A stretch of DNA of 64,000 nucleotides from Macrostomum lignano (Eukaryota): contig NIVC01001671.1 of the NCBI GenBank assembly GCA_002269645.1, positions 124,001 through 188,000 on the forward strand, in the 5' to 3' direction. Of this stretch, positions 3,089-50,620 are shown piece after piece (the stretch's first letter is position 1; every line of letters starts with the position of its first letter). Both the position numbers and the translations under genes were made by a program. Under the pieces are notes generated by a model that made no database searches, had not been told where the DNA came from, and saw only the letters and a program-made list of their open reading frames with translations.

Positions 3089-3367
3089 ATGTGCCAGCGG
3101 TCCAGGCTCGATTCCTAAAATGTTCTCGGCTTAGCTCTGGTCGTGCAATTAATGCAGTTGAGGGGCGCAGTGAAGTGTACATGCCTAACGATAATTAAAA
3201 GTTAGGGCCGCTGTATACTCCTGTGTGAGTGTGAGCCTGTGCGTATGGCTGCGTACGTACCCGCGCGCTTGTGTGCCTGCTCAGGGGAGTCGGCGGAATG
3301 GGCAATAATGTCACCCTTCAGTTGTGTGACAATGTCGCTTAAAGTGCGCCAGGGTGCACACAACCCC
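3089..3367 (+). mobile_element. Dispersed ~300-bp SINE-like repeat, copy A
   Basis: B-box-like GGCTCGATTCC at 3105-3115 and a 3' stem-loop GTGCGC-CAGG-GTGCAC. Homologous to 27611-27922 and 47235-47395 in reverse orientation. Confidence 0.7.
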
Positions 3368-3394
3368 ATGCCTTTAATAAAATAGTTTCAGAGT

Positions 3395-4425
3395 CAGAAG
3401 GGGTGGTGGGCCACAAAATCAGAAAGGGTGGTGAGGCATAGAGCTGGAAGGGGTGGTGGGCCATAGAGCCGGAAGGGGTGGTGGGCCATAGAGCCAGAAG
3501 GGGTGGTGGGCCATAGAGCCGGAAGGGGTGGTGGGCCATAGAGCCAAAAGGGGTGGTGAGCCACAGAGCCAGAAGGGGTGGTGGGCCATAAAGCCAGAAG
3601 GGTTGGTGGGCCACAGAGCCAGAAGGGGTGGTGGGCCATAGAGCCAGAAGGGGTGGTGGGCCATAGAGCCAAAAGGGGTAGTGAGCCACAGAGTCGGAAG
3701 GGGTGGTGGGCCATAGAGCCAGAAGGGGTGGTGGGCCATAGAGCCAGAAGGGGTGGTGGGCCATAGAGCCAGAAGGGGTGGTGGGCCATAGAGCCAAAAG
3801 GGGTAGTGAGCCACAGAGTCGGAAGGGGTGGTGGGCCATAGAGCCAGAAGGGGTGGTGGGCCATAGAGCCAGAAGGGGTGGTGGGCCATAGAGCCAGAAG
3901 GGGTGGTGGGCCATAGAGCCAAAAGGGGTAGTGAGCCACAGAGTCGGAAGGGGTGGTGGGCCATAGAGCCAGAAGGGGTGGTGGGCCATAGAGCCGGAAG
4001 AGGTGGTGGGCCATAGAGCCAAAAGGGGTAGTGAGCCATAGAGTCGGAAGGGGTGGTGAGCCACAGAGCCAGAAGGGGTGGTGGGCCATAGAGTCAGAAG
4101 GGGTAGTGGGCCATAGAGCCAGAAGGGGTGGTGAGCCATAGAGTCGGAAGGGGTGGTGAGCCACAGAGCCAGAAGGGGTGGTGGGCCATAGAGCCAGAAG
4201 GGGTGGTGGGCCATAGAGCCAAAAGGGGTAGTGAGCCACAGAGTCGGAAGGGGTAGTGGGCCATAGAGCCAGGGGTGGTGGGCCATAGAGTTGGAAGGGT
4301 GGTGGCCCATAGAGCCAGAAGGGGGGTGGGCCATAGAGTCGGAAGGGTGGTGGGCCATAGAGCCGGAAGGGGTGGTGGGCTATAGAGTCGGAAGGGGTGG
4401 TGGGCCATAGCGCCAGAAGGGGTGC
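3395..4425. repeat. 25-nt minisatellite GCCATAGAGCCAGAAGGGGTGGTGG
   Basis: Directly visible tandem array; the 25-aa periodicity in the minus-strand ORFs equals 3 units. Confidence 0.95.
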
Positions 4426-5029: not shown

Positions 5030-6085
5030 ATGTCTCCCTAAGAATCACCCTACTATCTCCCTAAGAATCATTCTACAACCTCCCTGAGAATCACCCTACA
5101 ACCTCCCTAAGAATCACCCTAAAATCTCCCTGAGAATCGCCCTACAATCTCCTTGAGAATCGCCCTACAATCTCCTTGAGAATCGCCCTACAATCTCCAT
5201 GAGAATCGCCCTAAAATCTCCCTGAGAATCGCCCTACAATCTCCCTGAGAATCGCCCTACATCTCCATGAGAATCGCCCTTAAATCTTCATGAGAATCGC
5301 CCTGCAATCTCCCTGAGAATCGCCCTACAATCTCCATGAGAATCGTCCTAAAATCTCCATGAGAATCGCCCTACAATCTTCATGAGAATCGCCCTAAAAT
5401 CTCCCTGAGAATCGCCCAAAAATCTCCCTGAGAATCGCCCTACATCTCCATGAGAATCGTCCTAAAATCTCCTTGAGAATCGCCCTAAAATCTCCCTGAG
5501 AATCGCCCTACATCTCCATGAGAATCGCCCAAAAATCTCCATGAGAATCGCCCTACAATCTCCATGAGAATCGCCCTACAATCTCCCTGAGAATCGCCGT
5601 ACAATCTCCATGAGAATCGCCCTACAATCTCAATGAGAATCGCCCTACAATTTCCCTGAGAATCGCCCTAAAATCTCATTGAGAATCGCCGTACAATCTC
5701 CCTGAGAATCGCCGTACAATCTCCCTGAGAATCGCCGTACAATCTCCTTGAGAATCGCCCTACAATCTCCCTGAGAATCGCCGTACAATCTCCTTGAGAA
5801 TCGCCCTACAATCTCCCTGAGAATCGCCGTACAATCTCCATGAGAATCGCCCTACAATCTCAATGAGAATCGCCCTACAATTTCCCTGAGAATCGCCCTA
5901 AAATCTCATTGAGAATCGCCGTACAATCTCCCTGAGAATCGCCGTACAATCTCCCTGAGAATCGCCGTACAATCTCCTTGAGAATCGCCCTACAATCTCC
6001 CTGAGAATCGCCGTACAATCTCCTTGAGAATCGCCCTACAATCTCCCTGAGAATCGCCCTACAATCTCCCTGAGAATCGCCCTGA
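5030..6085. repeat. 23-nt minisatellite GAGAATCGCCCTACAATCTCCCT
   Basis: Directly visible tandem array. Confidence 0.95.
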
Positions 6086-6495: not shown

Positions 6496-6659
6496 TAGCC
6501 GCAGTAAGATGTAAAGAAATGAAAAATATGGTTGTCTATAACTGATCACATGCAGTTCACCCTGCAATTAATATATCGGGGTTCGAAAATATGCAGCTTC
6601 AAGTCCTGCTGCCTTTGGTGTTTAGTCTGTAAATATTGGAGTAACATTTGAATTTTACA

Positions 6660-7860
6660 GAACTCTGTAAAATAGACTGTAGGCTATGAATGACAGCCTT
6701 CTGTAAAATAGTCTGTAGCTTATACATGACAGCATTCTGTAAAATATACTGTATTTTATACATGACAGCATTCTGTAAAATAGACTGTATTTTATACATG
6801 ACAGCATTCTGTAAAATAGACTGTATTTTATACATGACAGCATTCTGTAAAATAGTCTGTAGCTTATGCATGACAGCATTCTGTAAAATAGTCTGTAGCT
6901 TATGCATGACAGCATTCTGTAAAATAGACTGTATTTTATACATGACAGCATTCTGTAAAATAGTCTGTATTTTATGCATGACAGCATTCTGTAAGACTGT
7001 AGCTTATACATGACAGCATTCTGTAAAATAGTCTGTAGCTTATGCATGACAGCATTCTGTAAAATAGACTGTATTTTATGCATGACAGCATTATGTAAAA
7101 TAGTCTGTAGCTTATACATGACAGCATTCTGTAAAATATACTGTATTTTATGCATGACAGCATTCTGTAAAATATACTGTATTTTATGCATGACAGCATT
7201 CTGTAAAATATACTGTAGTTTATGCATGACAGCATTCTGTAAAATAGACTGCAATTAATGAATGACAGCATTCTGTAAAATATGCTGTAGCTTATGCATG
7301 ACAGCATTCTGTAAAATATACTGTAGTTTATGCATGACAGCATTCTGTAAAATATACTGCAGTTAATGCATGACAGCATTCTGTAAAATATGCTGTAGCT
7401 TATGCATGACAGCATTCTGTAAAATATACTGTAGCTTATGCATGACAGCATTCTGTAAAATATACTGTAGCTTATGCATGACAGCATTCTGTAAAATATA
7501 CTGTAGCTTATGCATGACAGCATTCTGTAAAATATTCTGTAGCTTATGCATGACAGCATTCTGTAAAATATACTGTAGCTTATGCATGACAGCATTCTGT
7601 AAAATATACTGTAGCTTATGCATGACAGCATTCTGTAAAATATACTGTAGTTTATGCATGACAGCATTCTGTAAAATATTCTGTAGCTTATGCATGACAG
7701 CATTCTGTAAAATATACTGTAGCTTATGCATGACAGCATTCTGTAAAATATACTGTAGCTTATGCATGACAGCATTCTGTAAAATATACTGCAGTTAATG
7801 CATGACAGCATTCTGTAAAATATACTGTAGCTTATGCATGACAGCATTCTGTAAAACTGT
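6660..7860. repeat. 36-nt minisatellite TTATGCATGACAGCATTCTGTAAAATATACTGTAGC
   Basis: Directly visible tandem array with 12-aa periodicity in the ORFs. Confidence 0.95.
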
Positions 7861-12780: not shown

Positions 12781-15676
12781 AGGAGTAACTAGGGCAAGGT
12801 TTCACTTTTGCATTCAATATTTAAAAAAAATTAGACATTTTAGACTTTTTGGTAGTAGGCTAGCTATGTGGTTTATCATAAAAGCTATATGCTTTTATGA
12901 TATTTCTGCAAATAAGCAGAAATATTATGAATATTTTAAGCAAATTAAAAATAACTACAATAATTGAGTTACTACAATAAGGCTCATGACATAATCATAA
13001 AAGAAAATAATGAAGTTCTTACTAAACTAAGATTTTTTATTATTATATAAATTAAATATTTGTTAAATTGAATTTATTTAAAAATCAAAATTCAATGTAT
13101 ATGGCCTAGCCAAAAAAATAATAGCTAAAAAGCTCTCTACAAAGAACAACTATTTAATTATAGTAAGCCTAACTAGACATTATTTAGTTTAGGTCCTTAT
13201 CATATTTATTTAATTAAATTAATTTTAATATTTTATAAAGATATTCTTCATTAAATTAAATTCATTTTAGATTAAAAATACAACACAACTGATAATAGTA
13301 ATTATAATTAGACTTATAATAGAATAGTGGTAATTATTCTAGATGGGAAAGTAGAAAGTACACCTAGTCCTAGACAGACCTAGACAAGCTTTATTGTTTA
13401 GCATTAAATACATACGTTTAATGGCCTTTTTAAAGTCCATTTACATAATTTGACTTTCTTTACTCGTATTGCTCTTCTAAGGGGCCTAGTTTTGGATTTA
13501 CAGAAAGCTACATCAGAATCAGTCTCAGACAAAGATTCTCAGAACAGAAATGAACGTCTGAAGCAGAAAGTACAATCCCACGAATATGAACGTACGTAAA
13601 TACCAGTAAACGCAAATCACTAAAACTAAAATAAGTTTTTTGAATTTTTGCTGTCAAGAAATAATAGGCCTAACTTAATTGAAACTGATACTAACCTTTT
13701 TCTAAGATAGGCCAAAAGCCTAACTAATTCAACCCCTAGCTCCTGCGACGGTGCGCGAGTTTCGCAGAAAATTATTTTTAAAATACGTACATGCGATAAA
13801 TCATTTTTCTAAGTGCAAAAAAATTCGGAATTTTAACTATCCACTTTCCTCAATTTATAAAATATAAAAGATTTTTTAATTGTCCTCTTCGCAAATTTCA
13901 CCATTTATTATGTCGGATATTTGTTTTACCAGGGCATCAGTCACTACAAGTACAGCTTTTGACAATTTAGAAACAATTGTACATTGCGGCGACAGCAGTT
14001 GCCACGTCGGCTGCGAAAGATGGAAACTTCGGCAAAAAGCCGCCAATATAAATTTAATGTTATTAAAATTTCAGCACAGTGTATATGTGAACTAAATGCG
14101 AGAAGCGAGTAGGAAAAGTCAAAGGCTTGAAAAGCCAGTGCGCACTTACATGTATATTATAGTTAAACTAACTAGCATGATTCAGCAAACACCAAACCCC
14201 TATCCGGCCAATGCCGGTCTGGGCAGACAGACAAACTCCCAGCCAGTCAGAACGCAAATCTCTAGTAGGCGACATGCCAAGCAAGCGGCCGCGCATACAC
14301 AACAGCTACATGTAGTGCGCGATCCCTGTTCTATGATCGCTACTTGATAAATTTTAATTATAAGTTTCAACGGCGAATAATCCTGATGCACATCTGTAGT
14401 AAAAAGGTATTCTGCACATTGTAACTTTGATATACGAAATTAATTGTGAATAATATTTTCCATTCGAAACACCGAATTTCTGGGTTACGCAAGTGCATCG
14501 AGACGATCTTAGGGTTGTGCTCTCATCTCTCACCCTTAACTTCTCTTTGCGCCTGCCACACACGAGTTATGAATTGCGAGTATATCTGACCTCATGAGTG
14601 ACGATATTCATGCAGCCTACTGCAAGCCTCTAATCTTTCAGAGTCCTTTGAAACTCAAGGTTTGGTGTCTCCTCCTCTTCTAAGCTTCTTCTCTCCTATC
14701 ATATCATCTTTCGTCTCATCTCGTCTCTCACAAATAACAGCACTGGGGCGCCAGCACCAAGGGGCGCCAGCACACAAAAAGGTAAAGTAGAGCGTACTAT
14801 ACTGTGGTATTATAAGAATTACAACTCTATATCAAATCTTGAAAATCAAATTATAGTCAACAATGACATCTGTCAATATTCGCAGCGAAAATGCTCACAG
14901 AATCAGGCAATTTTATATTTGCAGTAGTAACTGGCTTGACAACTGCATGACAGATTTATTTCTTTCATGAACCCGTGTTCGCGGTAAGACATGTGTTTTT
15001 GCTACTTAATTTCCTATTATCTACTCCGCCTGCAGATAACGTCCTGCTATTGACGGTTACACGTATGTATAAAATCAAATCAAATTACAACCAGCTTTAT
15101 TCAGTAAATTACCATTTGACAAAAACTATAGTTAGTACTGAAGTAAATATTACTAAAAATGCTGAACATGAAAGCAATAATTGTTGTTTTGTCAATGGCA
15201 GTACTCGCCTCCGGAACTAGTCATCATCGTCAGCGAAGTAAGTTAATCCTTTTGTCTAGCTGTGCACCCTAAGATATTGTGTAGCTACGAGCTACGCTAC
15301 CATAGACATTTTTGCCTAACCTACATTGGAGAGTGAGGCCCCCAGGTGTGAGGGCAGGTGCGAAGCCGAAGATGCTGTAGTGAAGCGCAAATAGCCGCAT
15401 CTTCTAAGACCTGAGAGAATCAGCACTTTACTACTTTAATTTCAAACTATTCTCATCATAGTCTACTATCAGCAGTAGAAATGCTAAAACCATTTATTTA
15501 TCAATCTATCAAATCACACAGTTTAGGTACAAACCGACAAAACAGTTAGTACAGGCTGTTTTATTTTTCTAAAATTGGCCTCCTTTGGGAGCGCCAGCAC
15601 CAGGGGCGCCAGCACCAGGGGCGCCAGCACCAGGGGCGCCAGCACCATATTAAAAAAACTTCCCCATCAACTGCAG

Positions 15677-16120
15677 GGTGCCCCGAAGACGCCGAGGATT
15701 GGCACTACTTCAACGGCTGGTGCTACTCCCTGTCCGAGGCTGCCGAAGGCTGGTTCGGCTCTGAGAAGGCCTGTCAGAAATTCGGCGGCCACCTGGCCAG
15801 CATCGCCAGCCGAGAGGAGAACAGTTTCGTCCAGGCTCTCGGATAGTGCCAGCAGAGTGCCTGGATCGGGCTGGTCAAGACTGACGTGTCTGATAGAAAA
15901 TTCTCCTGGTGGGATGATGCGGCATTCAACTACACAGAGAGATTCTCCATCAATATCAACGCCTATTACGACTGTGTTTATCAGTCTGGTAGCAACTATG
16001 GCAGGTGGTACAACACCTATTGCCAGAATCAGTACCGCAGTGTATGCATGGTGCCAGCTAGGGAAGAGTCCAAGATGCAGCATACAAATGTTGACAATGG
16101 TCTTGTGGTTGATGAGTCTG
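15677..16120 (+). CDS. Double C-type lectin gene copy 1, CTLD1 exon, with an in-frame TAG at 15844-15846
   Basis: CAG|GG TGC: CPEDAEDWHYFNGWCYSLS...SEKACQKFGGHLASIASREENSFVQALG*CQQSAWIGL...DCVY...RWYNTYCQNQYRSVC; donor G|GTACG, phase 1. Confidence 0.8.
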
Positions 16121-16554
16121 GTACGATACAAAAATTTAAAATTATAAATTCTGCATTAAAATCAATTTATATATATTTTACGCAATCGAATATTTTTGTA
16201 GTGGATTTATATTTATTATTAATTCCACTACTAATTTTATTCATTCCACTACCAAATTAATATTTTTGTAGTGGAATTAGTAGCTTAGCAGTAGACATAG
16301 AAAGTTGGTTCTAGAGTTGATCGGCTTTAATGGTAGACATAGTGGGGTTTTAGGGTAGATAGTCGGTTTCTAAGGTAGGATGGTAGGTTTTGAGGTAGAT
16401 TTTTGCAAGTTTCCAAGGTAGGTATTTGAGCTTTAAGGTAAGATAGTTAAATATAGGTGAGATACTAAGGTTCTAGGTTATACACAGGGGCTCTAGGTTA
16501 GACACAGGGACTACTCAACACATGTTTGAGTAGTCCCTGGTTAGACAGTAGGAT

Positions 16555-16740
16555 TCTAGGTTAGATAGTGGGGTTCTAGGGTAGATAGTGGGGCTCTAGG
16601 GTAGATAGCGGGGTTCTAGGGTAGATAATGGGGTTCTAGGGTAGATAGTGGGGTTCTAGGGTAGATAATGGGGTTCTAGGGTAGATAGTGAGGTTCTAGG
16701 GTAGATAGGGAGGTTCTAGGGTAGATCGTGGTTTATAGGG
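16555..16740. repeat. 20-nt minisatellite GGGTTCTAGGGTAGATAGTG
   Basis: Directly visible tandem array. Confidence 0.85.
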
Positions 16741-16848
16741 TTCATAGTAGTTTTCTTTAGCTATGCAAAATCTTGCATGGTATTATTATGGCATTGTGCA
16801 TATTATTTGCCCTAACAAACGCATTTCTATACTTATCGAATATTTTAG

Positions 16849-16880
16849 TTACTAAGGACGGGCTGACCAACAGGACAATG
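16849..16880 (+). CDS. Lectin copy 1 linker micro-exon (predicted)
   Basis: TTTTAG|TT ACT AAG GAC GGG CTG ACC AAC AGG ACA ATG|GTTTGT converts phase 1 to the phase 0 needed by the next exon. Confidence 0.5.
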
Positions 16881-16989
16881 GTTTGTTAAATCATCGGAGA
16901 TGTCTAATATTAGCTACCAATACTGAAAATTTACACAACAGTTTAGCTTATATTTCTGCTGTTATATAAATGCTTTTATATCATTCCAG

Positions 16990-17206
16990 TGCCCTGAAGG
17001 TTGGTTGGCCATCGAGGGCAGCTGTTTCTACGTGTCATCCAAGCGGACGAACTACTTCAATGCGCAGATCAGCTGCGAGTCCATGGGAGCCACCGTGGCC
17101 TCTGTCAGTAGCCGTCGGGAACAGGTGCTGCTCACCATGGCTCTGGGCTGCGATTCCAGAATTTGGATTGGCCTGGAGAAGGTTAAGCCTTGTCTGTCGG
17201 ACTCCA
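16990..17206 (+). CDS. Lectin copy 1, first half of CTLD2
   Basis: CAG|CPEGWLAIEGSCFYVSSKRTNYFNAQISCESMGATVASV...IWIGLEKVKPCLSDS A|GTGAGT. Confidence 0.8.
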
Positions 17207-17217
17207 GTGAGTTTGAG

Positions 17218-20070
17218 TGGAAGACACTGGGTTTCCTGGACAACACAGGATTTCTTAGAAAACATCGGGTTTCTTAGAAAACACAGGGTTTCTTGGAAAT
17301 CGCTGAGGCTTCCTTGAAGACACAAAGGTTTTTTAGACAACACCGGGTTTCCTGGAAAACACTGAGTTTCTTGGAAAACACTGAGGTTTCCCGGAAGACA
17401 CTGAGGTTTCCTGGAAGACACTGAGCTGGAAGACACTGAGGTTTCCTGGAAGACACTGAGCTGGAAGACACTGAGGTTTCCTGGAAGACACTGAGGTTTC
17501 CTGGAAGACACTGAGCTGGAAGACACTGAGGTTTCCTGGAAGACACTGAGGTTTCCTGGAAGACACTGGGGTTTTCTGGAAGACACTGAGGTTTCCTGGA
17601 AGACACTGAAGTTTTCTGGAAGACACTGAGGTTTCCTGGAAGATACTGAGGTTTCCCGGAAGACACTGAGGTTTCCTGGAAGACACTGGGGTTTTCTGGA
17701 AGACACTGGGGTTTCCTGGAAGACACTGAGGTTTCCTGGAAGACACTGGGGTTTTCTGGAAGACACTGGGGTTTTCTGGAAGACACTGAGGTTTCCTGGA
17801 AGACACTGAGGTTTCCTGGAAGACACTGAGGTTTTCTGGAAGACACTGAGGTTTCCCGGAAGACGCTGAGGTTTTCTGGAAGACACTGAGGTTTCCTGGA
17901 AGACACTGAAGTTTTCTGGAAGACACTGAGGTTTCCTGGAAGACACTGAGGTTTCCTGGAAGACACTGGGGTTTTCTGGAAGACACTGAGGTTTCCTGGA
18001 AGACACTGAAGTTTTCTGGAAGACACTGAGGTTTCCTGGAAGATACTGAGGTTTCCCGGAAGACACTGAGGTTTCCTGGAAGATACTGAGGTTTCCCGGA
18101 AGACACTGAGGTTTCCTGGAAGACACTGGGGTTTTCTGGAAGACACTGGGGTTTCCTGGAAGACACTGAGGTTTCCTGGAAGACACTGGGGTTTTCTGGA
18201 AGACACTGGGGTTTTCTGGAAGACACTGAGGTTTCCTGGAAGACACTGAGGTTTCCTGGAAGACACTGAGGTTTTCTGGAAGACACTGAGGTTTCCCGGA
18301 AGACGCTGAGGTTTTCTGGAAGACACTGAGGTTTCCTGGAAGACACTGAAGTTTTCTGGAAGACACTGAGGTTTCCTGGAAGACACTGAGGTTTCCTGGA
18401 AGACACTGGGGTTTTCTGGAAGACACTGAGGTTTCCTGGAAGACACTGAAGTTTTCTGGAAGACACTGAGGTTTCCTGGAAGATACTGAGGTTTCCCGGA
18501 AGACACTGAGGTTTCCTGGAAGACACTGAGCTGGAAGACACTGAGCTGGAAGACACTGAGGTTTCCTGGAAGACACTGAGGTTTCCTGGAAGACACTGAG
18601 CTGGAAGACACTGAGCTGGAAGACACTGAGCTGGAAGACACTGAGGTTTCCTGGAAGACACTGAGCTGGAAGACACTGAGCTGGAAGACACTGAGGTTTC
18701 CTGGAAGACACTGAGGTTTCCTGGAAGACACTGAAGTTTTCTGGAAGACACTGAGGTTTCCTGGAAGACACTGAGGTTTCCTGGAAGACACTGGGGTTTT
18801 CTGGAAGACACTGAGGTTTCCTGGAAGACACTGAGCTGGAAGACACTGAGGTTTCCTGGAAGACACTGAGGTTTCCTGGAAGACACTGAGGTTTCCTGGA
18901 AGACACTGAGGTTTCCTGGAAGACACTGAGGTTTCCTGGAAGACACTGAGGTTTCCTGGAAGACACTGAGGTTTCCTGGAAGACACTGGGGTTTTCTGGA
19001 AGACACTGAGGTTTCCTGGAAGACACTGAAGTTTTCTGGAAGACACTGAGGTTTCCTGGAAGATACTGAGGTTTCCCGGAAGACACTGAGGTTTCCTGGA
19101 AGACACTGGGGTTTTCTGGAAGACACTGAAGTTTTCTGGAAGACACTGAGGTTTCCTGGAAGATACTGAGGTTTCCCGGAAGACACTGAGGTTTCCTGGA
19201 AGACACTGAGCTGGAAGACACTGAGGTTTCCTGGAAGACACTGAGCTGGAAGACACTGAGGTTTCCTGGAAGACACTGAGCTGGAAGACACTGAGGTTTC
19301 CTGGAAGACACTGAACTGGAAGACACTGAGGTTTCCTGGAAGACACTGAGCTGGAAGACACTGAGGTTTTCTGGAAGACACTGAGGTTTTCTGGAAGACA
19401 CTGAGGTTTCCTGGAAGACACTGAAGTTTTCTGGAAGACACTGGGGTTTCCTGGAAGACACTGAGGTTTCCTGGAAGACACTGAGGTTTCCTGGAAGACA
19501 CTGAACTGGAAGACACTGAGGTTTCCTGGAAGACACTGAGCTGGAAGACACTGAGGTTTTCTGGAAGACACTGAGGTTTCCTGGAAGACACTGAAGTTTT
19601 CTGGAAGACACTGAGGTTTCCTGGAAGACACTGAGGTTTCCTGGAAGACACTGGGGTTTTCTGGAAGACACTGAGGTTTCCTGGAAGACACTGAAGTTTT
19701 CTGGAAGACACTGAGGTTTCCTGGAAGATACTGAGGTTTCCCGGAAGACACTGAGGTTTCCTGGAAGACACTGGGGTTTTCTGGAAGACACTGGGGTTTC
19801 CTGGAAGACACTGAGGTTTCCTGGAAGACACTGAGGTTTTCTGGAAGACACTGAAGTTTTCTGAAAGACACTGAGGTTTCCTGGAAGACACTGAGGTTTC
19901 CTGGAAGACACTGAGGTTTCCTGGAAGACACTGAGGTTTCCTGGAAGACACTGAGGTTTCCTGGAAGACACTGAGGTTTTCTGGAAGACACTGAGGTTTC
20001 ATAGAAGACACTGGGGTTTTCTGGAAGGCACTGAAGTTTCCTGGAAGACACTGAGGTGTTATTGGGTTTC
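17218..20070. repeat. ~2.85-kb intronic satellite of 20-nt (GGAAGACACTGAGGTTTCCT) and 14-nt (GGAAGACACTGAGCT-type) units
   Basis: Directly visible; it lies between the two CTLD2 half-exons and has diverged edges around a homogeneous core. Confidence 0.97.
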
Positions 20071-20158
20071 ACTGAGGTGTCAGATAAGACAACAGGTATG
20101 CGTGAATGAATCAAGCATTGCAAATATTCACCGCGAAAGAACAAATGTTGCAATCCAG

Positions 20159-20325
20159 GCAAAAGCTACTGCTACATGTGGATGGACGGCTCTGAGATCG
20201 GCTACGCAGATTGGGCCAGTGGGCATCCATCAAGCTCCAATGAGATTGAGTGCACCTACACTCTGGGCAGATGGTACACCACAAACTGTTATAATGAGTA
20301 CAACTTTGTCTGCAAGAAGAAGTGA
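20159..20325 (+). CDS. Lectin copy 1, second half of CTLD2 (to stop)
   Basis: CAG|GC AAA: KSYCYMWMDGSEIGYADWASGHPSSSNEIECTYTLGRWYTTNCYNEYNFVCKKK*; the W.DGS, W...P, C..W..C..FVC pattern is present and the phase matches the previous donor. Confidence 0.85.
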
Positions 20326-20751
20326 GCTGCAGTGGGTATACAAAAACTCGATAAGATTTGAACAGATTGAATTCTCGACTGGGTGGTGATGGCATTCTGA
20401 AATCTTCAAGATGACTTCTTCCGTTGAAATATACTCTGTGCCGTTATGAGCACCAGCATTAAAAACGGTTTCGGGAAGTTTAGCGTTTTTATTTTTTTGT
20501 CTGAGCTTCAGATCAGCAAATGCGACAATTCAATGGTCAAAAACTTAATACTGAATTCCGTCTCAAAACTGAAATAATATCTCTGTTTTCGGCAGCTTCT
20601 TCGACAAACAGATCATGAGTGAACACAACAACATTGCTGCAACTAAAAAGGGAGTATCGTTGTTGAACATATTGTGGTTCGATTCTTGCAAATCGCAATA
20701 TCGATTACATATTTTAAACAAGAGTCGGCAAACTCCGGCCCGCGGGTCACA

Positions 20752-22260
20752 TCTCCTCTCCTCTTTCTCTCCTCTCCTCTCTTCTCTCCTCTCCTCTCTT
20801 CTCTCCTCTCCTCTCTTCTCTCCTCTCCTCTCTTCTCTCCTCTCCTCTCTTCTCTCCTCTCCTTTCTTCTCTCCTCTCCTCTCTTCTCTCCTCTTCTCGC
20901 TTCTCTCCTCTCCTCTCTCCTCTCCTCTCCTCTCCTCTCTTCTCTCCTCTCCTCTCTCCTCTCCTCTCTTCTCTCCTCTCCTTCTTCTCTCCTCTCCTCT
21001 CTTCTCTCCTCTCCTCTCTTCTCTCCTCTCCTCTCTTCTCTCCTCTCCTCTCTTCTCTCCTCTCCTCGCTTCTCTCCTCTCCTTTCTTCTCTCCTCTCCT
21101 CTCTTCTCTCCTCTCCTCGCTTCTCTCCTCTCCTCGCTTCTCTCCTCTCCTCTCTTCTCTCCTCTCCTCTCCTCTCTTCTCTCCTCTCCTCTCTTCTCTC
21201 CTCTCCTCTCTTCTCTCCTCTCCTCTCTTCTCTCCTCTCCTCTCTTCTCTCCTCTCCTCTCTCCTCTCCTCTCCTCTCCTCTCTTCTCTCCTCTCTTCTC
21301 TCCTCTCCTCTCTTCTCTCCTCTCCTCTCTTCTCTCCTCTCCTCTCTTCTCTCCTCTCCTTTCTTCTCTCCTCTCCTCTCTTCTCTCCTCTTCTCGCTTC
21401 TCTCCTCTCCTCTCTCCTCTCTCTCTCCTCTCTCTCTCTCTCTCTCCTCTCCTCTCTCCTCTCCTCTCTTCTCTCCTCTCCTCTCCTCTCTTCTCTCCTC
21501 TCTTCTCTCCTCTCCTCTCTTCTCTCCTATCTTCTCTCTTCTCCTCTACACTCTCCTACGAGCCTACGTAGTCTCCTCACTCTTCTCTTCTCCTCTCTTC
21601 TCTCCTCTCCTCTCTTCTCTCCTCTCCTCTCTTCTCTCCTCTCCTTCTTCTCTCCTCTCCTCTCTTCTCTCCTCTTCTCGCTTCTCTCCTCTCCTCTCTC
21701 CTCTCCTCTCCTCTCCTCTCTTCTCTCCTCTCCTCTCCTCTCTCTCTCTTCTCTCCTCTCCTCTCTTCTCTCCTCTCCTCTCTTCTCTCCTCTCCTCTCT
21801 TCTCTCCTCTCCTCTCTTCTCTCCTCTCTCTCTCTCCTCTCTCTCCTCTCCTCTCTTCTCTCCTCTCTTCTCTCCTCTCCTCTCTTCTCTCCTCTCCTCT
21901 CTTCTCTCCTCTCCTCTCTTCTCTCCTCTCCTTTCTTCTCTCCTCTCCTCTCTTCTCTCCTCTTCTCGCTTCTCTCCTCTCCTCTCTCCTCTCCTCTCCT
22001 CTCCTCTCTTCTCTCCTCTCCTCTCTCCTCTCCTCTCTTCTCTCCTCTCCTCTCCTCTCTTCTCTCCTCTCTTCTCTCCTCTCCTCTCTTCTCTCCTATC
22101 TTCTCTCTTCTCCTCTACACTCTCCTACGAGCCTACGTAGTCTCCTCACTCTTCTCTTCTCCTCTCTTCTCTCCTCTAATCTCCCTTTTCCTCTCCCTTC
22201 CCTCCTATCTCCTCTCCTATTTGCTCTCTCCTTCCCTATTTGTCTCATCTTTTCTCCTTT
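20752..22260. repeat. (CTCTC/CTCTT)n pyrimidine microsatellite with an internal ~570-bp duplication
   Basis: The unique marker CTACGAGCCTACGTAGTCTCCTCAC occurs at about 21556 and 22125. Confidence 0.95.
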
Positions 22261-24417: not shown

Positions 24418-24930
24418 CAGTTACATGTAAAAGGACAGGTCTAAATACACTGTAAATGAGTCGTTTGGCCCTCCAACAAGCTATAAAATGACTTCCAAAG
24501 ACATTATTTTTATTCTTGGGATGTATAAAAAAATAAAATATAGTGATGCAGTGTCATATACATGTAATATCGAAGTCGCTGAACAGCGACGTTAACGTTG
24601 GAATTTTGTACCGGAACTTACTAAAGTATAGACTTGTGACAGTTTTGGATAAGCAGAGCGCTGAAAACACTTAGAGGACAGGGTGTTTAATAGCGCATGA
24701 TGGGTGCTAAACATTTCCTGCACTGTACACTTTGGATGCGTACATTGAGCCTACAAACAGAGGAGAGAGAATTAAGTCAGATCAGAAAGTACACTACGGG
24801 AAGGCTTTTGACGTCCAACAATCTCTGACTTTACTATAACCTGCAGAGCAAATCCAACTAGGAACTGAAATGCAATGCGAATTCTGCTTTTCTTCAACGC
24901 ATCGAAGAATACGAATTTATAGATCAGAAA

Positions 24931-25282
24931 ATGGACGAAGAAGAGTCCCTGAGTATCTGGCTGTCCGGCTTGATGTACAAAGCCGGCTTCAGTTCTGCTA
25001 ATGCACGAATTCAATCGGCAATGGCCAGCGGTATGGAGGACGTGCTCAGCTTCCTGTTGAAATCCGACAGTCTGCGCGTGTTTGGCAGCTACGCTGACGG
25101 ATGGGGCAGCTGTCTGGATAAGCTGGACGGCAGCATTGAGCCATCAAGCGATATTGACGTCACAGTTATGTCCGGTCGGCAGCCGATACATCCTGTAGTT
25201 GATGCGCAACTCGAAGCGAATTGTCAGGCCGAGCACATGCTGGCTGAGTATAAAGACGGTCACGTGTTCTTCCGAAGTGGAT
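24931..25282 (+). CDS. cGAS-like receptor / Mab-21 nucleotidyltransferase, exon 1
   Basis: ATG at 24931; VFGSYADG...SSDIDVTVM is the NTase GS...DxD signature; donor T|GTAAGT, phase 1. Confidence 0.85.
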
Positions 25283-25638
25283 GTAAGTGGATTATCGTTA
25301 AAAGTTGGAGAAGCTAGGCGGTAGTAGATCCAGAGATTTTTTATTGGGTATTGTTAATTACAAGGCCAGCACCAAGGGGCTTTAGCACTAGGGGCTTTAG
25401 CACCAAGGGGCTTTAGCACCAGAGGCTTTAGCACAAGGGGCGCCAGCGTAAGGGGCTTTAGCACCAGGGGTGCCAGCATAAGGGACTTTAGCACTCGCAC
25501 TCATAATATAGGACCTTTAGAGGCCATGCAGCGTGTTTGAAAGCCTTTCTGTCACGTAGGCATTAAATGAAAACAGAAAAAATAAACCTGTTAAAGCAAT
25601 AAAGCTAAAAAAGGATGCTCTCTTACAAAAATTTGCAG

Positions 25639-26879
25639 TTAAGCCGAACTTCAGCATTGAGAAGTCCAAGCTGGGCATGGTTGATGCTTTCGACATTATC
25701 GTAGCTCTGGACTGCTGCTCCTATCCTTCAATTGAGCTGCTGCAGGACGGCTACAGGACTCGCACAGGGCGAGCATCATGCATGCCAGAGCGGATCATTG
25801 AGCTGCTCCGAGCGGAGGTCTTCGGCGACTCACCCAAGTGCCACGCGGTAGCCGCGTCACCACCGAATCTCCCTGCAGGCAGTTGCATGCGGGTCAGCAC
25901 GACGCTGCTCGAGAGATCCGTGATGCAAAACCTCACGGACATTCAGGGCCAGTTTTTCATCATCGTCAAGTTTCTTATCAAGCGAGTGCTGAGCGATATC
26001 GGGTTGAAAACGTACATTGCCAAGAACCTGCTGTTCTACATGCTTGACGAAACTCCGGTGGAAAAATGGCAAACGGGCAGCCACCTAATCGAGCTTGTGC
26101 GTACCTCGCTGGAAATTCTCGTAGAAATGATGGAGAGCACAGACTCCGAAGACGCGTGCATGAAGCATTTCTTTCTCAGAGACGCAAACGTGTACTTCAA
26201 GAAGGATCACAAGAAAAAGGCTGAGATCGTCGCTTCCGTGAAGCAAACTCTAGTAAAAATTCACGAGGAAATCGGCAAGTTTGCGGACAGTCTAACAGAA
26301 CTCCCAGTCGGAGGGATGCAGTTTCACGCCTTATTCTCCTTGCATCTGCTTGCCGAAGTCCATATTGCTGCCGCCACTGGGACCGAGCGGGATGCCATCA
26401 TCAGCGCTTTCGGAGAAGTTCGAGACGCCCACGTGGCCGTGTCTAAAGTTCCAACAGAAGATTCGTTAGATAGCCACTTGAAGAAACTGTTAAAGCAAAT
26501 TTCCGAACTTCCGGATTGCGTCAGAGTCAGCAAAGATTGGCTTAAAGCGCTTGCATATCTCAGGGTTGGTAAATCGTTGGATGCTGCCGCAGAGGCATTC
26601 CAGTTCTCAATAAGCAAGGGGATGCGATGTCCCGCAGAGGGACCGGAGGTTCAGTTTGATGGAGCAAAATCAGCGATCCTGGGAATGTTGCAAGAGCCAA
26701 ACCCGTTGAGGCTGCAGCTTCGTGATGGCAAAATCGTGGCCTGCACCCTTGAGAATGAGCTGACGCCTCTGGCCAAACTGATTGCAGCGATGCGCGATGG
26801 AACAGTGCCCAGTGTTGCAAATGTGTTCACCGAAATGCTTCAAAGCACTCCTTTGCTGCCAATGCTGATCAACTATCGA
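25639..26879 (+). CDS. cGAS-like/Mab-21 protein, exon 2
   Basis: CAG|TT AAG is in phase. Contains the third acidic residue in AFDIIVAL and the Mab-21 helical lobe CMRVSTTLLERSVM...QFFIIVKFLIK...LKTYIAKNLLFY...P..KW...KHFFL.DANVY; donor CGA|GTGAGT. Confidence 0.85.
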
Positions 26880-26906
26880 GTGAGTGATTTGCAACTTGTT
26901 TTTATA

Positions 26907-26940
<34 letters not shown>

Positions 26941-26962
26941 TAACAACTTACACCTGCCCCAG

Positions 26963-27025
26963 TTGGGCCAGATGTGCAACCCACTGCGCTATTGCGCTGC
27001 GCATCTGAAGGCTGCGTACGACTGA
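26963..27025 (+). CDS. cGAS-like/Mab-21 protein, exon 3 (to stop)
   Basis: CCCCAG|TTG GGC CAG...TAC GAC TGA (LGQMCNPLRYCAAHLKAAYD*), phase 0, following an (AAT)n intron. The joined CDS is about 551 aa. Confidence 0.6.
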   Translation: MGQMCNPLRYCAAHLKAAYD

Positions 27026-27059
27026 CTGTTCAGTCCAAGGACTGGGCGGTCGCCACACA

Positions 27060-27200
27060 CCCTCAATATTACCCCAGCTAATGCTGGCACCAATTTTACA
27101 GCTGGGTGAAGTGAAGCAATGCAGATTTATGTCAAGGACACAAATTGTTCCGAGTGGGTAAAGAATTGAACCCGAATCGACTCCGACGCTGTAACCACTT
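27060..27200 (-). mobile_element. Fragment of a second tRNA-derived SINE family
   Basis: Minus strand: A-box-like GTGGTTACAGCG, B-box-like GGGTTCAATTC, then CACCCAGCTGTAAAATTGGTGCC, which resembles the conserved central domain of invertebrate SINEs. Confidence 0.5.
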
Positions 27201-27610
27201 GTAGAGAAAATAAGACTAAGCCTAAAAACTAGAGATTGGGCGCCATGTAGAGAAAAACTAGAGAGTAACTTGGAGTTAAATTGAATAAGTTAATTGAGTT
27301 AATTGAAAATTTGGGCGCAGGGCCCAAACCGATATATTTATAGAACATTTAACTTTGGGGGGGGGCGGGGTTGAGTCCAGAATAATAAGGAGAGGGGGTT
27401 GGACTGCGCGACTGAAGAGAGAGGCGAGAATGGAGAGCCAATCAGAAGGCAGCAAGGGAAAGAGAGATAAGAATAACAAGATTGAGCTAGACAGAGAGAG
27501 AGAAAACAGAGTAAACAGAGACAAGTGAAGGTGAACTAAGAAATGACTTAGGAAAGTCGCGACACCACTATAGGCTACAAAAATGGCAGTATTACATTTA
27601 TTAGACGCAG

Positions 27611-27922
27611 GGGGTTGTGTGCACCCTGGCGCACTTTAAGCGACATAGGCACACAACCGGCGAGAGGCATTACTGCCCATTCCGCCGACTCCCCTGAGCA
27701 GGCATACAAGCGCGCGGATACGTACGCAGGCACACACTCACACAGGAGTGTACAGCGGCCCTAACTTTATATTATCGTTAGGCATGTACACTTCACTGTG
27801 CCTTGGGGGGTTGGCCCTCAAGGCCGTTAATTGCACGAGCAGAGCCAAGCCGAGATTCCAATTCAGCCCCAAATTAATGCGACTGCAATTGGAATCGAGC
27901 CTGGGTCGCTGGCACACCCCCT
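27611..27922 (-). mobile_element. SINE-like repeat, copy B
   Basis: Reverse-complement match to 3089-3367, including GGCTCGATTCC. Confidence 0.75.
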
Positions 27923-28326
27923 GGCAGTATTACATTAGTTTTAACAAAATACACCGGAAAAAAACATGACACGAGCTCGATTCTGTTGCTCTGTCTGAAC
28001 TTCTATAGCACAGCTTAGAAATATTTGTTTAAAAACAACGCAGAATAAAATTTTGACTCGTAGGCCTTTTACCTATAGTACACTTTCCTTGCTTAACTAG
28101 CTACATCACTATAGCTAGGAATTTAAATTTCTTGAATTGCAGAAAGTTGAGCAGCCACGCGCGTTGTCTGAATTGCGCAACTTTACTCGACATCTTCGCA
28201 CCATAGTGACCAGCTTTTCACCAGCCTCGCTGATCGAAGACGATATTGACTGAGTTGATGGTTGTTAATGTCAAATGCGTCCTTTACTTTCACTATAGCT
28301 ATAGTTTCCATAAATATTTATTTTAG

Positions 28327-28935
28327 CGGGGGCGTTGCCACCGGGGGGGACAGGGGGACATGCCAATGCTTTGTTCCCCCACCCCACCTTTGTTGACCTG
28401 TTATGGAAATCAAAAATTTTGCTTCAGGGCGACAAAACATAGCGCCTGCAAACGAAAACACTGTCTGTGGCGCTAAAATGAGTGTCTGCGGCGCCAAAAT
28501 GAGTGTCTGCGGCGCTAAAATGAGTGCCTGCGGCGCTAAAATGAGTGTCTGCGGCGCTAAAATGGGTGCCAGCGGCGCCAATATGAGTGCCTGCAGAGCT
28601 AAAATAAGTGCCAGAGGTGCTAAAATGAGTGCCTGCGGCGCTAAAAGGTATACCTGCGGCGCCAAAATGAGTGCCTGCGGCGCCAAAATGAGTGCCTGCG
28701 GCGCAAAAATGAATGCCTGCGGCGCCAAAATGAGTGCCTGCGGCGCTAAAATGAGTGCCTGCAGCGCTAAAATGACTGCCTGCGGCGCTAAAATGAGTGC
28801 CAGAGGTGCTAAAATGAGTGCCTGTGGCGCCGATTCTGAAAATAATGTACATGTATAAATTTAGTCATGTACATGTAGATGTACAATTCTTGGCTTTGTC
28901 CCCCCCCCACCATAAAATCCACGGCAATGCCTCTG
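28327..28935. mobile_element. MITE-like element carrying an internal 21-nt tandem repeat (GGCGCTAAAATGAGTGCCTGC)
   Basis: Imperfect TIRs CGGGGGCGTTGCC / GGCAATGCCTCTG with G- and C-rich subterminal blocks; no clean TSD. Confidence 0.55.
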
Positions 28936-46880: not shown

Positions 46881-47234
46881 AATGTTGTACTTTGACTGTA
46901 TTTGAAATCTAGGATTTTTATGTTATTGTTCTACTATAATAGTGCAGTTTGTTGCAGTGAAACTGCTAACTAAAATCTCCTGCATTTTTGTTTAATATTT
47001 TTTGTCTTTTTTTCTCGTAACTGATTTGACTATTGAAAGCAATTGCTATTTTTTTAAGTCTGGCCACTGTAAGCAAAATTTAGTTTATCCTATTAACAGC
47101 TGATTAATTATACGTTTATATGTTTAAATTTAATACGGTTTTTCTTTCAGTTTATACAACTTCTTTGTTGTATACCGAAAAATGTTTCAAAGCAAAAGTA
47201 TTTTGGTTTTTGTTTTATTGGAGTCATGGAGACT

Positions 47235-47395
47235 GTGTGCACCCTGGTGCACTTTAAGCGACATTGTCACACAACCGGCGAGAGGCATTGCTGCCCATTC
47301 CGCCGACTCTCCTGAGCAGGCGCACACTCACACAGGAGTGTACAGCGGCCCTGAATTTGTGTACACTGTACACTTCACTGCGCCCTGGGGGGGTT
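47235..47395 (-). mobile_element. SINE-like repeat, copy C (partial, 3' half only)
   Basis: Matches TGTGTGCACCCTGG.GCACTTTAAGCGACAT...CACACAGGAGTGTACAGCGGCCCT of copies A and B. Confidence 0.7.
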
Positions 47396-49268: not shown

Positions 49269-49379
49269 GTATTGTATTTTTGAGTCCCTGTTCTAATGGT
49301 TGTTTTGGTTTTTAATTAGAATTTAGGTTATCGTTAGCCTGAATCTTTTGCTCTTTGAGTCCATGAATCATTCTTTTGA

Positions 49380-50620
49380 TTCACTCCAGCACCTGAATCA
49401 TTGTCTTTGATTCACCTCAGCACCTGAATCACTGTCTTTGATTCACCTCAGCCCCTGAATCATTGTCTTTGATTCACCTCAGCACCTGAATCACTGTCTT
49501 TGATTCACCTCAGCCCCTGAATCATTGTCTTTGATTCACCTCAGCAGCCCCTGGATCATTGTCTTTGATTCACCTCAGCCCCTGAATCACTGTCTTTGAT
49601 TCACCTCAGCACCTGAATCATTGTCTTTGATTCACCTCAGCCCCTGAATCACTGTCTTTGATTCACCTCAGACCCTGAATCACTGTCTTTGATTCACCTC
49701 AGCCCCTGAATCATTGTCTTTGATTCACCTCAGCACCTGAATCACTGTCTTTGATTCACCTCAGCAGCCCGTGAATCATTGTCTTTGATTCACCTCAGCA
49801 CCTGAATCACTGTCTTTGATTCACCTCAGCCCCTGAATCACTGTCTTTGATTCACCCCAGCCCCTGAATCATTGTCTTTGATTCACCTCAGCAGCCCCTG
49901 AATCATTGTCTTTGATTCACCTCAGCAGCCCCTGAATCACTGTCTTTGATTCACCTCAGCAGCCCCTGAATCATTGTCTTTGATTCACCTCAGCCCCTGA
50001 ATCATTGTCTTTGATTCACCTCAGCCCCTGAATCACTGTCTTTGATTCACCTCAGCACCTGAATCATTGTCTTTGATTCACCTCAGCCCCTGAATCATAG
50101 TCTTTGATTCACCTCAGACCCTGAATCATTGTCTTTGATTCACCTCAGCCCCTGAATCATTGTCTTTGATTCACCTCAGCACCTGAATCATTGTCTTTGA
50201 TTCACCTCAGCCCCTGAATCACTGTCTTTGATTCACCTCAGACCCTGAATCATTGTCTTTGATTCACCTCAGACCCTGGATCATTGTATTTGATTCACCT
50301 CAGCACCTGAATCATTGTCTTTGATTCACCTCAGCCCCTGAATCATTGTCTTTGATTCACCTCAGACCCTGAATCATTGTTTTTGATTCACCTCAGCCCC
50401 TGAATCATTGTCTTTGATTCACCTCAGCCCCTGAATCATTGTCTTTGATTCACCTCAGCCCCTGAATCATTGTCTTTGATTCACCTCAGACCCTGAATCA
50501 TTGTCTTTGATTCACCTCAGCCCCTGAATCACTGTCTTTGATTCACCTCAGACCCTGAATCACTGTCTTTGATTCACCTCAGCCCCTGAATCATTGTCTT
50601 TGATTCACCTCAGCTCCTGA
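49380..50620. repeat. 31-nt intronic minisatellite CTTTGATTCACCTCAGCCCCTGAATCATTGT
   Basis: About 40 tandem units; each contains the inverted pair TGATTCA / TGAATCA. Confidence 0.95.

What the first reader, a model, noticed from the sequence alone, without database searches (positions are those of the whole stretch)
24931..27025. Intact cGAS-like receptor (cGLR/Mab-21 nucleotidyltransferase) with a long C-terminal helical extension
Seen: three phase-compatible exons give ~551 aa with FGSYADG, SDIDV and AFDIIV (the three acidic metal-binding positions of the NTase fold), a Mab-21 helical lobe, and ~200 extra helical residues ending in ...NPLRYCAAHL. The GS-to-DxD spacing (~20 aa) is longer than the usual 9-13, and no vertebrate-type Zn thumb is visible. 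Known: animal cGLRs are pattern-recognition enzymes that make cyclic dinucleotides for STING. Inference: this is a catalytically competent flatworm cGLR with an unusual regulatory C-terminal domain, and its ligand and product are unknown.
Basis: partly seen in the sequence, partly recalled or inferred. Interest (0 to 1): 0.78.

Follow-up and report, generated by a model that had tools for sequence, protein, structure and literature searches.

The report
Flatworm cGAS-like enzyme gene, already catalogued family

Summary
The gene is real and intact, but its true extent is 24931-28253 (+), not 24931-27025. The last exon is 28143-28253, giving 567 aa. That protein is identical to GenBank PAA65247.1 (Macrostomum lignano BOX15_Mlig010774g1, 'Mab-21-like').

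The fold and catalytic motif hold. The motif is G52-S53, D74-x-D76 and D136. Profile-profile alignment links the core to bivalve Mab-21 proteins (99.6%) and, through them, to human cGAS D319. The AlphaFold model finds cGAS, oyster Cv-cGLR1 and MAB21L1 first.

A 10-residue insertion after the GS motif is invariant across the paralogs. There is no Zn thumb. The roughly 230-aa C-terminal helical domain is family-specific and matches no known fold.

The family has at least 74 clusters. All 16 sampled strong family hits (E <= 5e-13) are M. lignano, and many carry ankyrin repeats. Li et al. 2023 cloned five paralogs for their cGLR screen; none is among their 15 named active enzymes.

The protein is acidic (pI 5.5), which argues against a nucleic-acid ligand. 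Product, ligand and receptor remain unknown, and I did not test for STING in this species. Verdict: a new member of a known kind, of moderate interest.

The parts
24931..25282 (+). Exon 1 (aa 1-117 plus 1 nt). It encodes the N-terminal spine helix, the GS motif (G52-S53, 25084-25089), the family-specific 10-aa loop insertion, and D74-I-D76 (25150-25158).
   Evidence: ATG at 24931 and GTAAGT donor after 25282. tblastn of P0001 aa 1-119 at 98% identity. Exact match of the spliced product to PAA65247.1.
25283..25638 (+). Intron 1 (356 nt), containing a 15-bp minisatellite at 25368-25494.
   Evidence: GTAAGT...tttgcag boundaries. TRF result.
25639..26879 (+). Exon 2 (aa 118-531). It encodes the third catalytic acid D136 (25692-25694), R202-x-S204-x-T206-x-x-E209 (25890-25913), the Mab-21_C helical lobe (aa 240-318, 26004-26240), and most of the C-terminal helical domain (from aa ~336, 26292 onward).
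26880..28142 (+). Intron 2 (1263 nt).
   Evidence: GTGAGT donor and ttgaattgcag acceptor. Repeat copies. All database models splice across this interval.
28143..28253 (+). Exon 3 (aa 532-567, KVEQPRALSELRNFTRHLRTIVTSFSPASLIEDDID, plus the TGA stop at 28251-28253).
   Evidence: tblastn hit, sequence, in-frame 1704-nt CDS, exact protein match to PAA65247.1.

Best explanation
The locus is Macrostomum lignano gene Mlig010774.g1 (protein PAA65247.1, 567 aa, three exons). It encodes a cytosolic cGAS-like receptor (cGLR) type nucleotidyltransferase of the Mab-21 fold. It is one member of a large, apparently species- or lineage-restricted expansion.

Shown:
- The gene is intact.
- Its N-terminal 335 aa form the bilobed cGAS/Mab-21 fold.
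- The metal-binding triad D74, D76, D136 and the G52-S53 loop are in place.
- The nucleotide-contacting R202, S204, E209 and Y243 equivalents of cGAS are present.
- The triad is kept in 66 of 76 family representatives.

Inferred mechanism: binding of an activating ligand on the face opposite the active site repositions the loop that follows G52-S53. In this family that loop carries an invariant 10-residue insertion (D56-G-W-G59 ... L62 ... G67). With the loop repositioned, two NTPs and Mg2+ bind, and a cyclic (di)nucleotide second messenger is made that switches on an immune or cell-death response.

Ligand and recognition modules (inferred):
- The whole family is acidic (pI 5.1-6.2), so the ligand is more likely a protein or a cationic molecule than dsRNA or dsDNA.
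- The fast-evolving C-terminal helical domain is the likely ligand- or partner-recognition or regulatory module. The N-terminal ankyrin arrays of many paralogs probably play a similar role.

The receptor of the signal is unknown.
For: Gene model: exact identity of the corrected 567-aa product to PAA65247.1.

Homology:
- hhalign of the family profile against bivalve Mab-21 proteins gives probability 99.6%, E 1.6e-24, over aa 6-325. GS aligns with GS, SDID with SDSD, and D136 with the invariant bivalve D192.
- Those bivalve proteins pass the Pfam thresholds for PF03281 and PF20266.
- They align to human cGAS with probability 99.0%, and bivalve D192 corresponds to cGAS D319.

Fold: the AlphaFold2 model has pLDDT 74.6 and pTM 0.79. 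Its top Foldseek PDB matches are human and mouse cGAS, Cv-cGLR1 (8gjw) and MAB21L1, at probability 1.0 and E 1e-6 to 5e-5.

Conservation:
- Invariant among paralogs of 34-47% identity: F51, S53, D56, G57, W58, G59, S73, D74, D76, R202, S204, T206, E209, Y243, K246.
- 66 of 76 representatives keep G[SG]/[DE]x[DE]/[DE].

Published context:
- The motif fits the published cGLR definition. Five paralogs, including PAA57558.1 (47% identical), were selected as cGLRs for the screen of Li et al. 2023 (PMC9980059).
- Acidity, set against the published rule that nucleic-acid-sensing cGLRs have pI above 8.5 while acidic ones respond to unknown non-nucleic ligands.

Immune or cell-death context: paralogs are fused to ankyrin repeats and to caspase domains.
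Against: - No activity data exist for this protein.
- The five paralogs in the published screen carry no 'active' note, so none is among the 15 characterised enzymes.
- Pfam PF03281 does not match, and PF20266 scores 20.2 bits against a 24.1-bit threshold.
- A family profile finds no PDB chain by sequence.
- The 10-residue insertion sits in the loop that gates catalysis in cGAS and could change or abolish the chemistry.
- The two near-identical sister copies are degenerate: g2 has G52S and g3 is frameshift-truncated. This hints at relaxed constraint on this particular gene.
- cGAS and STING are reported lost in other flatworms (PMC4117786, PMC13563047).
- I could not inspect model coordinates, so convergence of the three acids is inferred from alignment and strand topology only.
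- No expression data were available here.
Confidence: 0.6

Rival explanations
1. It is a catalytically silent Mab-21-type scaffold or sensor. Like MAB21L1/2 or MiD49/51, the protein keeps the fold, and here even the motif, but works by binding partners rather than by making a nucleotide signal. The C-terminal domain would then be its interaction platform.
For: MAB21L1 is among the top structural matches. None of the five paralogs in the published screen is a named active enzyme. Family members fused directly to caspase domains have degenerate triads, GSDNS and GSDNT, which shows the fold can serve this family without catalysis. The sister copy g2 tolerates G52S.
Against: The triad, the GS motif and the nucleotide-contacting residues are invariant or nearly so across paralogs that share only 34-47% identity. 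They are intact in 66 of 76 representatives. That pattern is hard to explain without selection on catalysis.
Confidence: 0.22
2. It is an active nucleotidyltransferase with different chemistry. It might make linear 2'-5' or 3'-5' oligonucleotides like OAS, or add nucleotides to an RNA or protein substrate, rather than making a cyclic dinucleotide.
For: By eye, the FGSxxDG...SDIDV motif also resembles the signature of terminal nucleotidyltransferases. The invariant 10-aa insertion lies in the substrate-gating loop. No STING partner is known in flatworms.
Against: The best structural matches are cGAS and cGLR, not OAS or poly(A)/terminal uridylyl transferases. Homology runs through the whole cGLR cage, including the C-lobe. 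The R-x-S-x-[ST]-x-x-E segment typical of cGAS is kept.
Confidence: 0.13
3. It is a decaying duplicate with no function. The window copy would simply be the least damaged of three recent copies in a polyploid genome.
For: Copy g2 carries G52S and copy g3 is frameshifted. Window versus g2 shows 5 nonsynonymous against 4 synonymous codon differences.
Against: The window copy has an uninterrupted 567-codon frame with canonical splice sites and every conserved family residue. The coding sequence differs from g2 at 9 of 567 codons, whereas the 4.8-kb locus as a whole is 97.8% identical. There are too few differences for a meaningful dN/dS.
Confidence: 0.05

Closest known systems
Macrostomum lignano cGLR candidates cloned by Li et al. 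2023 (PAA57558.1, PAA86972.1, PAA45980.1, PAA93208.1, PAA68676.1; PMC9980059, Table S3 rows 89-93)
   Same: Same species and same family. PAA57558.1 (the cluster of P0003) is 47% identical over the full length. These proteins share the GSxxDGWG...SDIDV loop insertion, the CHAV / RVST..ER / KTY..K..LF..L.ETP / CM.HFF blocks and the C-terminal helical domain.
   Different: This particular gene (Mlig010774.g1) was not among the five cloned. Whether it appears in their 3,020-sequence list could not be checked, because the stored table is truncated. No activity was reported for the five.
Bivalve Mab-21 / TPR-type cGLR-like proteins (e.g. Sinanodonta woodiana KAL3855470.1, Mercenaria mercenaria XP_053382747.1)
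   Same: These are the closest relatives outside Macrostomum. hhalign gives probability 99.6% over the whole catalytic cage, with equivalent GS, SDxD and third-acid positions. Both groups have a long C-terminal extension and no Zn thumb.
   Different: The bivalve proteins lack the 10-aa loop insertion. They pass the Pfam Mab-21 thresholds. Their C-terminal extension ends in TPR repeats and shows no detectable similarity to the flatworm one (hhalign probability 0.07%).
Human/mouse cGAS and oyster Cv-cGLR1 (PDB 5vdq, 4k9b, 8gjw)
   Same: Best structural matches. The bilobed NTase cage is the same and the catalytic triad is equivalent (D136 corresponds to cGAS D319 through the bivalve bridge). 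R376/S378/E383 of cGAS correspond to R202/S204/E209.
   Different: Sequence identity is only 13-16%. There is no Zn thumb. The protein is acidic (core pI 5.3, against 9.1 for the cGAS catalytic domain). The GS-to-DxD spacer is 20 residues rather than 11. There is an extra domain of about 230 aa.
Acidic 'auto-active' cGLRs such as Pocillopora Pd-cGLR (cGLR-01; Li et al. 2023)
   Same: Low pI (about 5), implying a ligand that is not nucleic acid.
   Different: Pd-cGLR has a demonstrated product. The flatworm protein has none, and no close sequence relationship between the two was established here.
MAB21L1 (PDB 5eom/5eog)
   Same: Same fold, and a comparable Foldseek score.
   Different: Li et al. 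describe the Mab21L1/2/3 clade as not containing a predicted functional active site. The flatworm family keeps a complete, conserved triad.

Membership tests
cGLR (cGAS-like receptor) as defined by Li et al. 2023, PMC9980059 | Active-site motif h[QT]GS-X8-20-[DE]h[DE]h-X50-90-h[DE]h | tested here: met
   The sequence reads V-F-G52-S53, X20, D74-I-D76-V, X57, F-D136-I. X20 is at the upper limit. F replaces Q/T, exactly as in paralog PAA57558.1, which the authors accepted.
cGLR (Li et al. 2023) | [quoted passage not shown] | tested here: met
   hhalign of the family against bivalve Mab-21 proteins covers aa 6-325 at probability 99.6%. The bivalve profile against human cGAS gives probability 99.0% over the C-lobe and third-acid strand. 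A direct family profile against a single cGAS sequence failed.
cGLR (Li et al. 2023) | Predicted structural homology to known cGLR/CD-NTase enzymes | tested here: met
   The AF2 model was built for sister copy P0001 (99% identical) and has pTM 0.79. Its top Foldseek PDB hits are cGAS, Cv-cGLR1 and MAB21L1 at probability 1.0.
cGLR (functional sense) | Ligand-dependent synthesis of a nucleotide second messenger | not testable with these tools
   This needs biochemistry. Five paralogs were screened by Li et al. and none is among the 15 named active enzymes.
cGLR-STING pathway | A STING (or other) receptor for the product encoded in the same genome | not tested
   No searchable M. lignano proteome or genome was available. 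The species is absent from Table S5 of Li et al.. Other flatworms are reported to lack STING.
Pfam Mab-21 (PF03281 NTase domain + PF20266 Mab-21_C) | Score at or above the curated gathering thresholds | tested here: inconclusive
   For this protein PF20266 scores 20.2 bits against a 24.1 cut-off, and PF03281 gives no hit. All 11 paralogs hit PF20266, with a best E of 7.9e-07. Profile-profile comparison shows the homology.
Vertebrate-type cGAS (dsDNA sensor) | Zn-thumb insertion H(X5)CC(X6)C between the RLSFS..E strand and the following helix | tested here: not met
   Human cGAS has a 12-residue insertion here relative to the bivalve proteins. The flatworm family has the bivalve length.
Nucleic-acid-sensing cGLRs | Basic protein (pI > 8.5) with a positively charged ligand groove | tested here: not met
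   pI is 5.5 for the full protein and 5.3 for the core, with a net charge of -15. The whole family lies at pI 5.1-6.2, against 9.1 for the human cGAS catalytic domain. Surface charge on the model could not be computed.
TPR-fused cGLRs of bivalves | C-terminal TPR-containing extension | tested here: not met
   No TPR Pfam hit. hhalign of the C-terminal regions gives probability 0.07%. Foldseek of the C-terminal model gives a best E of 0.23.

The most novel reading that the evidence does not exclude
The Macrostomum clade is a STING-independent branch of cGLR signalling. On this reading, acidic cGLRs carry an invariant 10-residue insertion in the activation loop and sense a non-nucleic-acid ligand, either protein or cationic. 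They would sense it through a family-specific C-terminal helical domain, or through ankyrin arrays in the paralogs. They would then signal to a receptor other than STING. In some paralogs the sensor is wired directly to a fused caspase. All of this would be in a phylum otherwise thought to have lost the pathway.
Probability: 0.2. Interest if true: 0.75.

Novelty: new member of a known kind. Interest (0 to 1): 0.35.

Why it matters
Flatworms are usually described as having lost cGAS-STING. This locus shows that at least one free-living flatworm keeps a large, diversified set of cGAS-like enzymes with intact catalytic motifs, and in fact has expanded it.

Macrostomum lignano is a genetically tractable model, with transgenesis and RNAi (my own knowledge). 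The family could therefore be used to find a new class of cGLR ligand, since the proteins are acidic and so probably do not bind nucleic acid. It could also reveal a new downstream receptor.

For this particular gene the practical gain is modest.

Tried and rejected
1. It is phase-compatible, but no database model uses it, and the corrected model is an exact match to PAA65247.1. Comparison with the sister locus could not discriminate, because that stretch is 100% identical there.
2. phmmer and a family-profile hmmsearch against PDB sequences gave no meaningful hit.
3. hhalign of the family profile against a single human cGAS sequence failed. I replaced it with a two-step bridge through bivalve Mab-21 proteins.
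4. The C-terminal domain on its own gave a poor AF2 model (pLDDT 57). Foldseek against the PDB gave nothing (best E 0.23). hhalign against the bivalve C-terminal TPR region gave probability 0.07%. Its fold stays unknown.
5. I looked for upstream ankyrin exons in the window and found none by tblastn.
6. There are no other paralogs in the window; tblastn hits elsewhere all have E of 0.004 or worse and are short.
7. tRNA and Rfam scans of the region and of the window found nothing.
8. A bacterial promoter/terminator scan at the 3' end is irrelevant for a eukaryote.
9. STING in M. lignano was considered and not run. The word-indexed protein search would be swamped by vertebrate STINGs, so a negative result would mean nothing.
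10. A literature search for the gene identifier gave no papers.
Full report
**Observation**

The + strand between 24931 and 26879 carries two clean coding exons.
- Exon 1 runs 24931-25282 and ends at a GTAAGT donor.
- Exon 2 runs 25639-26879, follows a tttgcag acceptor and ends at a GTGAGT donor.
- The two join in phase.

Numbered on the final protein, they are:
- FGSYADG, holding G52-S53;
- SDIDV, holding D74 and D76;
- AFDIIV, holding D136.

The closest database proteins end KVEQPRALSELRNFTRHLRTIVTSFSPASLIEDDID. That peptide is encoded without a mismatch at 28143-28253, behind a ttgaattgcag acceptor and ahead of a TGA stop.

The resulting 1704-nt CDS translates to 567 aa. An exact-sequence look-up finds this very protein as PAA65247.1 / UniRef A0A267EWI3. 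It is named 'hypothetical protein BOX15_Mlig010774g1 [Macrostomum lignano]' and 'Mab-21-like HhH/H2TH-like domain-containing protein'.

**Organism and copies**

All 12 first-pass homologues come from the flatworm Macrostomum lignano. A syntenic sister locus (L001, GCA_002269645.1 contig NIVC01001984.1) is 97.8% identical over 4.8 kb.

Its CDS (copy g2, P0001) differs from the window at 9 codons, 4 synonymous and 5 not. One of the five is G52S, in the catalytic GS motif. A third copy (g3, P0163) is frameshift-truncated at about aa 381. The window copy is therefore the only one of the three that keeps both the canonical motif and the full length.

**What it is**

Direct family searches are weak.
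- Pfam gives only Mab-21_C (PF20266) at 20.2 bits, below the 24.1-bit cut-off, and no PF03281 hit.
- PDB sequence searches find nothing, either with the protein or with a family profile.

Homology is nevertheless firm.
- A profile of 11 paralogs, searched against 1.84 billion representatives, finds 294 proteins, 74 of them at E <= 1e-30.
- All 16 strong family hits (E <= 5e-13) that I looked up are M. lignano.
- Five of the six bivalve proteins pass both Pfam Mab-21 thresholds, and the sixth passes PF20266 only.
- The bivalve proteins align to the flatworm profile with hhalign probability 99.6% (E 1.6e-24) over flatworm aa 6-325. GS aligns with GS, SDID with SDSD, and D136 with the invariant bivalve D192.
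- The bivalve profile in turn aligns to human cGAS with probability 99.0%. I had recalled the cGAS sequence from memory and verified it as exact against PDB 5v8o. In this alignment bivalve D192 falls on cGAS D319 and WRISF..E on WRLSF..E.

By this bridge, D136 corresponds to cGAS D319, R202 to R376, S204 to S378 and E209 to E383.

An AlphaFold2 model of the 99%-identical sister protein has pLDDT 74.6 and pTM 0.79 (the tool refuses spliced window sequences). Its best PDB matches are human and mouse cGAS, oyster Cv-cGLR1 and MAB21L1, at probability 1.0, E 1e-6 to 5e-5 and target TM about 0.5. Its strand order places G52 at the end of strand 1, D74/D76 at the start of strand 2 and D136 on a later core strand (residues 135-143), as expected for a Pol-beta-type NTase. 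I could not read the coordinates, so spatial convergence of the acids is inferred rather than measured.

**Distinctive features**

1. *Loop insertion.* The loop after GS is 10 residues longer than in the bivalve relatives. There are 20 residues between S53 and D74, against 11 in human cGAS. The insertion is not a loose loop: D56, G57, W58, G59, L62 and G67 are invariant among paralogs that share only 34-47% identity. In cGAS this loop is the one that rearranges on DNA binding (my own knowledge).
2. *No Zn thumb.* The 12-residue insertion of cGAS is absent.
3. *Acidity.* The protein has pI 5.5, its core has pI 5.3 and its net charge is -15. All paralogs lie at pI 5.1-6.2, against 9.1 for the cGAS catalytic domain. 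Li et al. 2023 report that dsDNA- and dsRNA-sensing cGLRs have pI above 8.5, and that acidic cGLRs appear to respond to unknown non-nucleic-acid ligands.
4. *C-terminal domain.* Residues ~336-567 form an extra, mostly helical domain.
   - It is present throughout the family.
   - It evolves much faster than the core: 13-30% identity against 44-59%.
   - It has no Pfam match.
   - It shows no similarity to the TPR-bearing extension of the bivalve relatives (probability 0.07%).
   - It has no structural match in the PDB. The isolated model is poor (pLDDT 57) and the best Foldseek E is 0.23.

**Family context**

Many paralogs carry N-terminal ankyrin arrays. Three have the order cGLR-like domain, ankyrin, caspase (Peptidase_C14). 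The two of those that were scored, P0068 and P0077, have degenerate triads. Across 76 representatives that cover all five catalytic positions, 66 keep G[SG]/[DE]x[DE]/[DE].

**Literature**

Li et al. 2023 (PMC9980059) define cGLRs by three criteria: the motif h[QT]GS-X8-20-[DE]h[DE]h-X50-90-h[DE]h, homology over both lobes, and predicted structural homology. This protein meets all three. Its X20 is at the limit, and F sits in the Q/T position, as in an accepted paralog.

Their Table S3 lists five M. lignano proteins of this same family as enzymes cloned for the biochemical screen (rows 89-93). One is PAA57558.1, whose cluster representative P0003 is 47% identical to the window protein. Their 'Note' column, which names the 15 active enzymes, is empty for all five.

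[quoted passage not shown] M. lignano does not appear in their cGLR/STING count table. I found no paper dealing with this gene or with STING in Macrostomum.

**Mechanism**

The best-supported reading is a cGLR-type signalling nucleotidyltransferase. A ligand-induced rearrangement of the extended GS loop would allow Mg2+ and NTPs to bind at D74/D76/D136, and a nucleotide second messenger would be made. The acidic surface points away from nucleic acid as the ligand. The divergent C-terminal domain, and the ankyrin arrays in paralogs, are the likely recognition or regulatory modules.

The fold, the motif and its conservation are shown. Catalysis, product, ligand, receptor and immune role are inferred.

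The rivals are:
- a non-catalytic Mab-21 scaffold, supported by the caspase-fused degenerate paralogs and by the lack of reported activity;
- a different NTase chemistry;
- a decaying duplicate.

**Novelty**

The gene is annotated and the family is in a published cGLR catalogue, so this is a new member of a known kind. Three things remain open and of moderate interest: why a flatworm keeps dozens of acidic cGLR-like genes, what the invariant loop insertion and the orphan C-terminal domain do, and what receives the signal.

Noticed in passing
L001:10001-13304 (sister copy g2) and protein P0163 (copy g3): The two near-identical sister copies of this gene are damaged. g2 has G52S in the catalytic GS motif, and g3 is frameshift-truncated at about aa 381. 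Only the window copy (g1) is fully canonical.
   Followed up: partly
proteins P0068 (PAA59752.1), P0173 (PAA80948.1), P0077 (PAA93319.1), not in the window: Three M. lignano paralogs have the order cGLR-like domain, ankyrin repeats, caspase (Peptidase_C14, E about 1e-25). The two that were scored have degenerate catalytic triads (GSDNS, GSDNT). This suggests a sensor wired directly to a protease. Gene-model fusion artefacts are not excluded.
   Followed up: partly
window 24862-24930: The reading frame stays open for 23 codons upstream of the annotated ATG (ELKCNANSAFLQRIEEYEFIDQK). tblastn similarity to the ankyrin-to-NTase linker of paralog P0011 begins at 24904. No ankyrin exon was found upstream in the window. 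This could be a remnant of an ankyrin-fused ancestor or an unannotated 5' exon junction.
   Followed up: partly
protein positions C143, C144, C185, H186, C291, H294 (window about 25713-25718, 25839-25844, 26157-26168): A set of invariant or near-invariant Cys and His residues is spread over the core (CC..CH..C..H), and the CH pair is shared with the bivalve relatives. It could be a metal site distinct from the cGAS Zn thumb. I could not check it without model coordinates.
   Followed up: no
window 25368-25494, about 26906-26940, 27597-27855, 28465-28830: The introns and 3' flank are full of repeats. There is a 15-bp minisatellite in intron 1 and an (AAT)n run in intron 2. Intron 2 also holds a dispersed repeat with copies at 3124-3381 (-) and 47234-47392 (+). 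A 21-bp minisatellite of 17 copies starts about 210 nt after the stop codon.
   Followed up: partly
window 15000-22200: The upstream neighbour in the syntenic locus is a gene with a C-type lectin hit (Lectin_C). In the window this region holds a 2.8-kb array of a 20-bp unit (17218-20057, 147 copies), open in three frames, followed by a 1.4-kb (TCTCC)n tract (20752-22126).
   Followed up: no
window 391-2964 (-): An 857-codon GC-rich ORF has armadillo-like LRNLT/LWNLT motifs, a Q/H-rich tract and a tail of HPHIS/FPSPHF repeats encoded by a 15-bp minisatellite (410-997). It has no Pfam hit.
   Followed up: no
whole window: More than 20 separate minisatellite arrays with 4-40-bp units are scattered over the 64 kb, for example 3390-4424, 5033-6083, 6657-7856, 49364-50634 and 58666-59570. 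There is no Rfam family hit anywhere.
   Followed up: no
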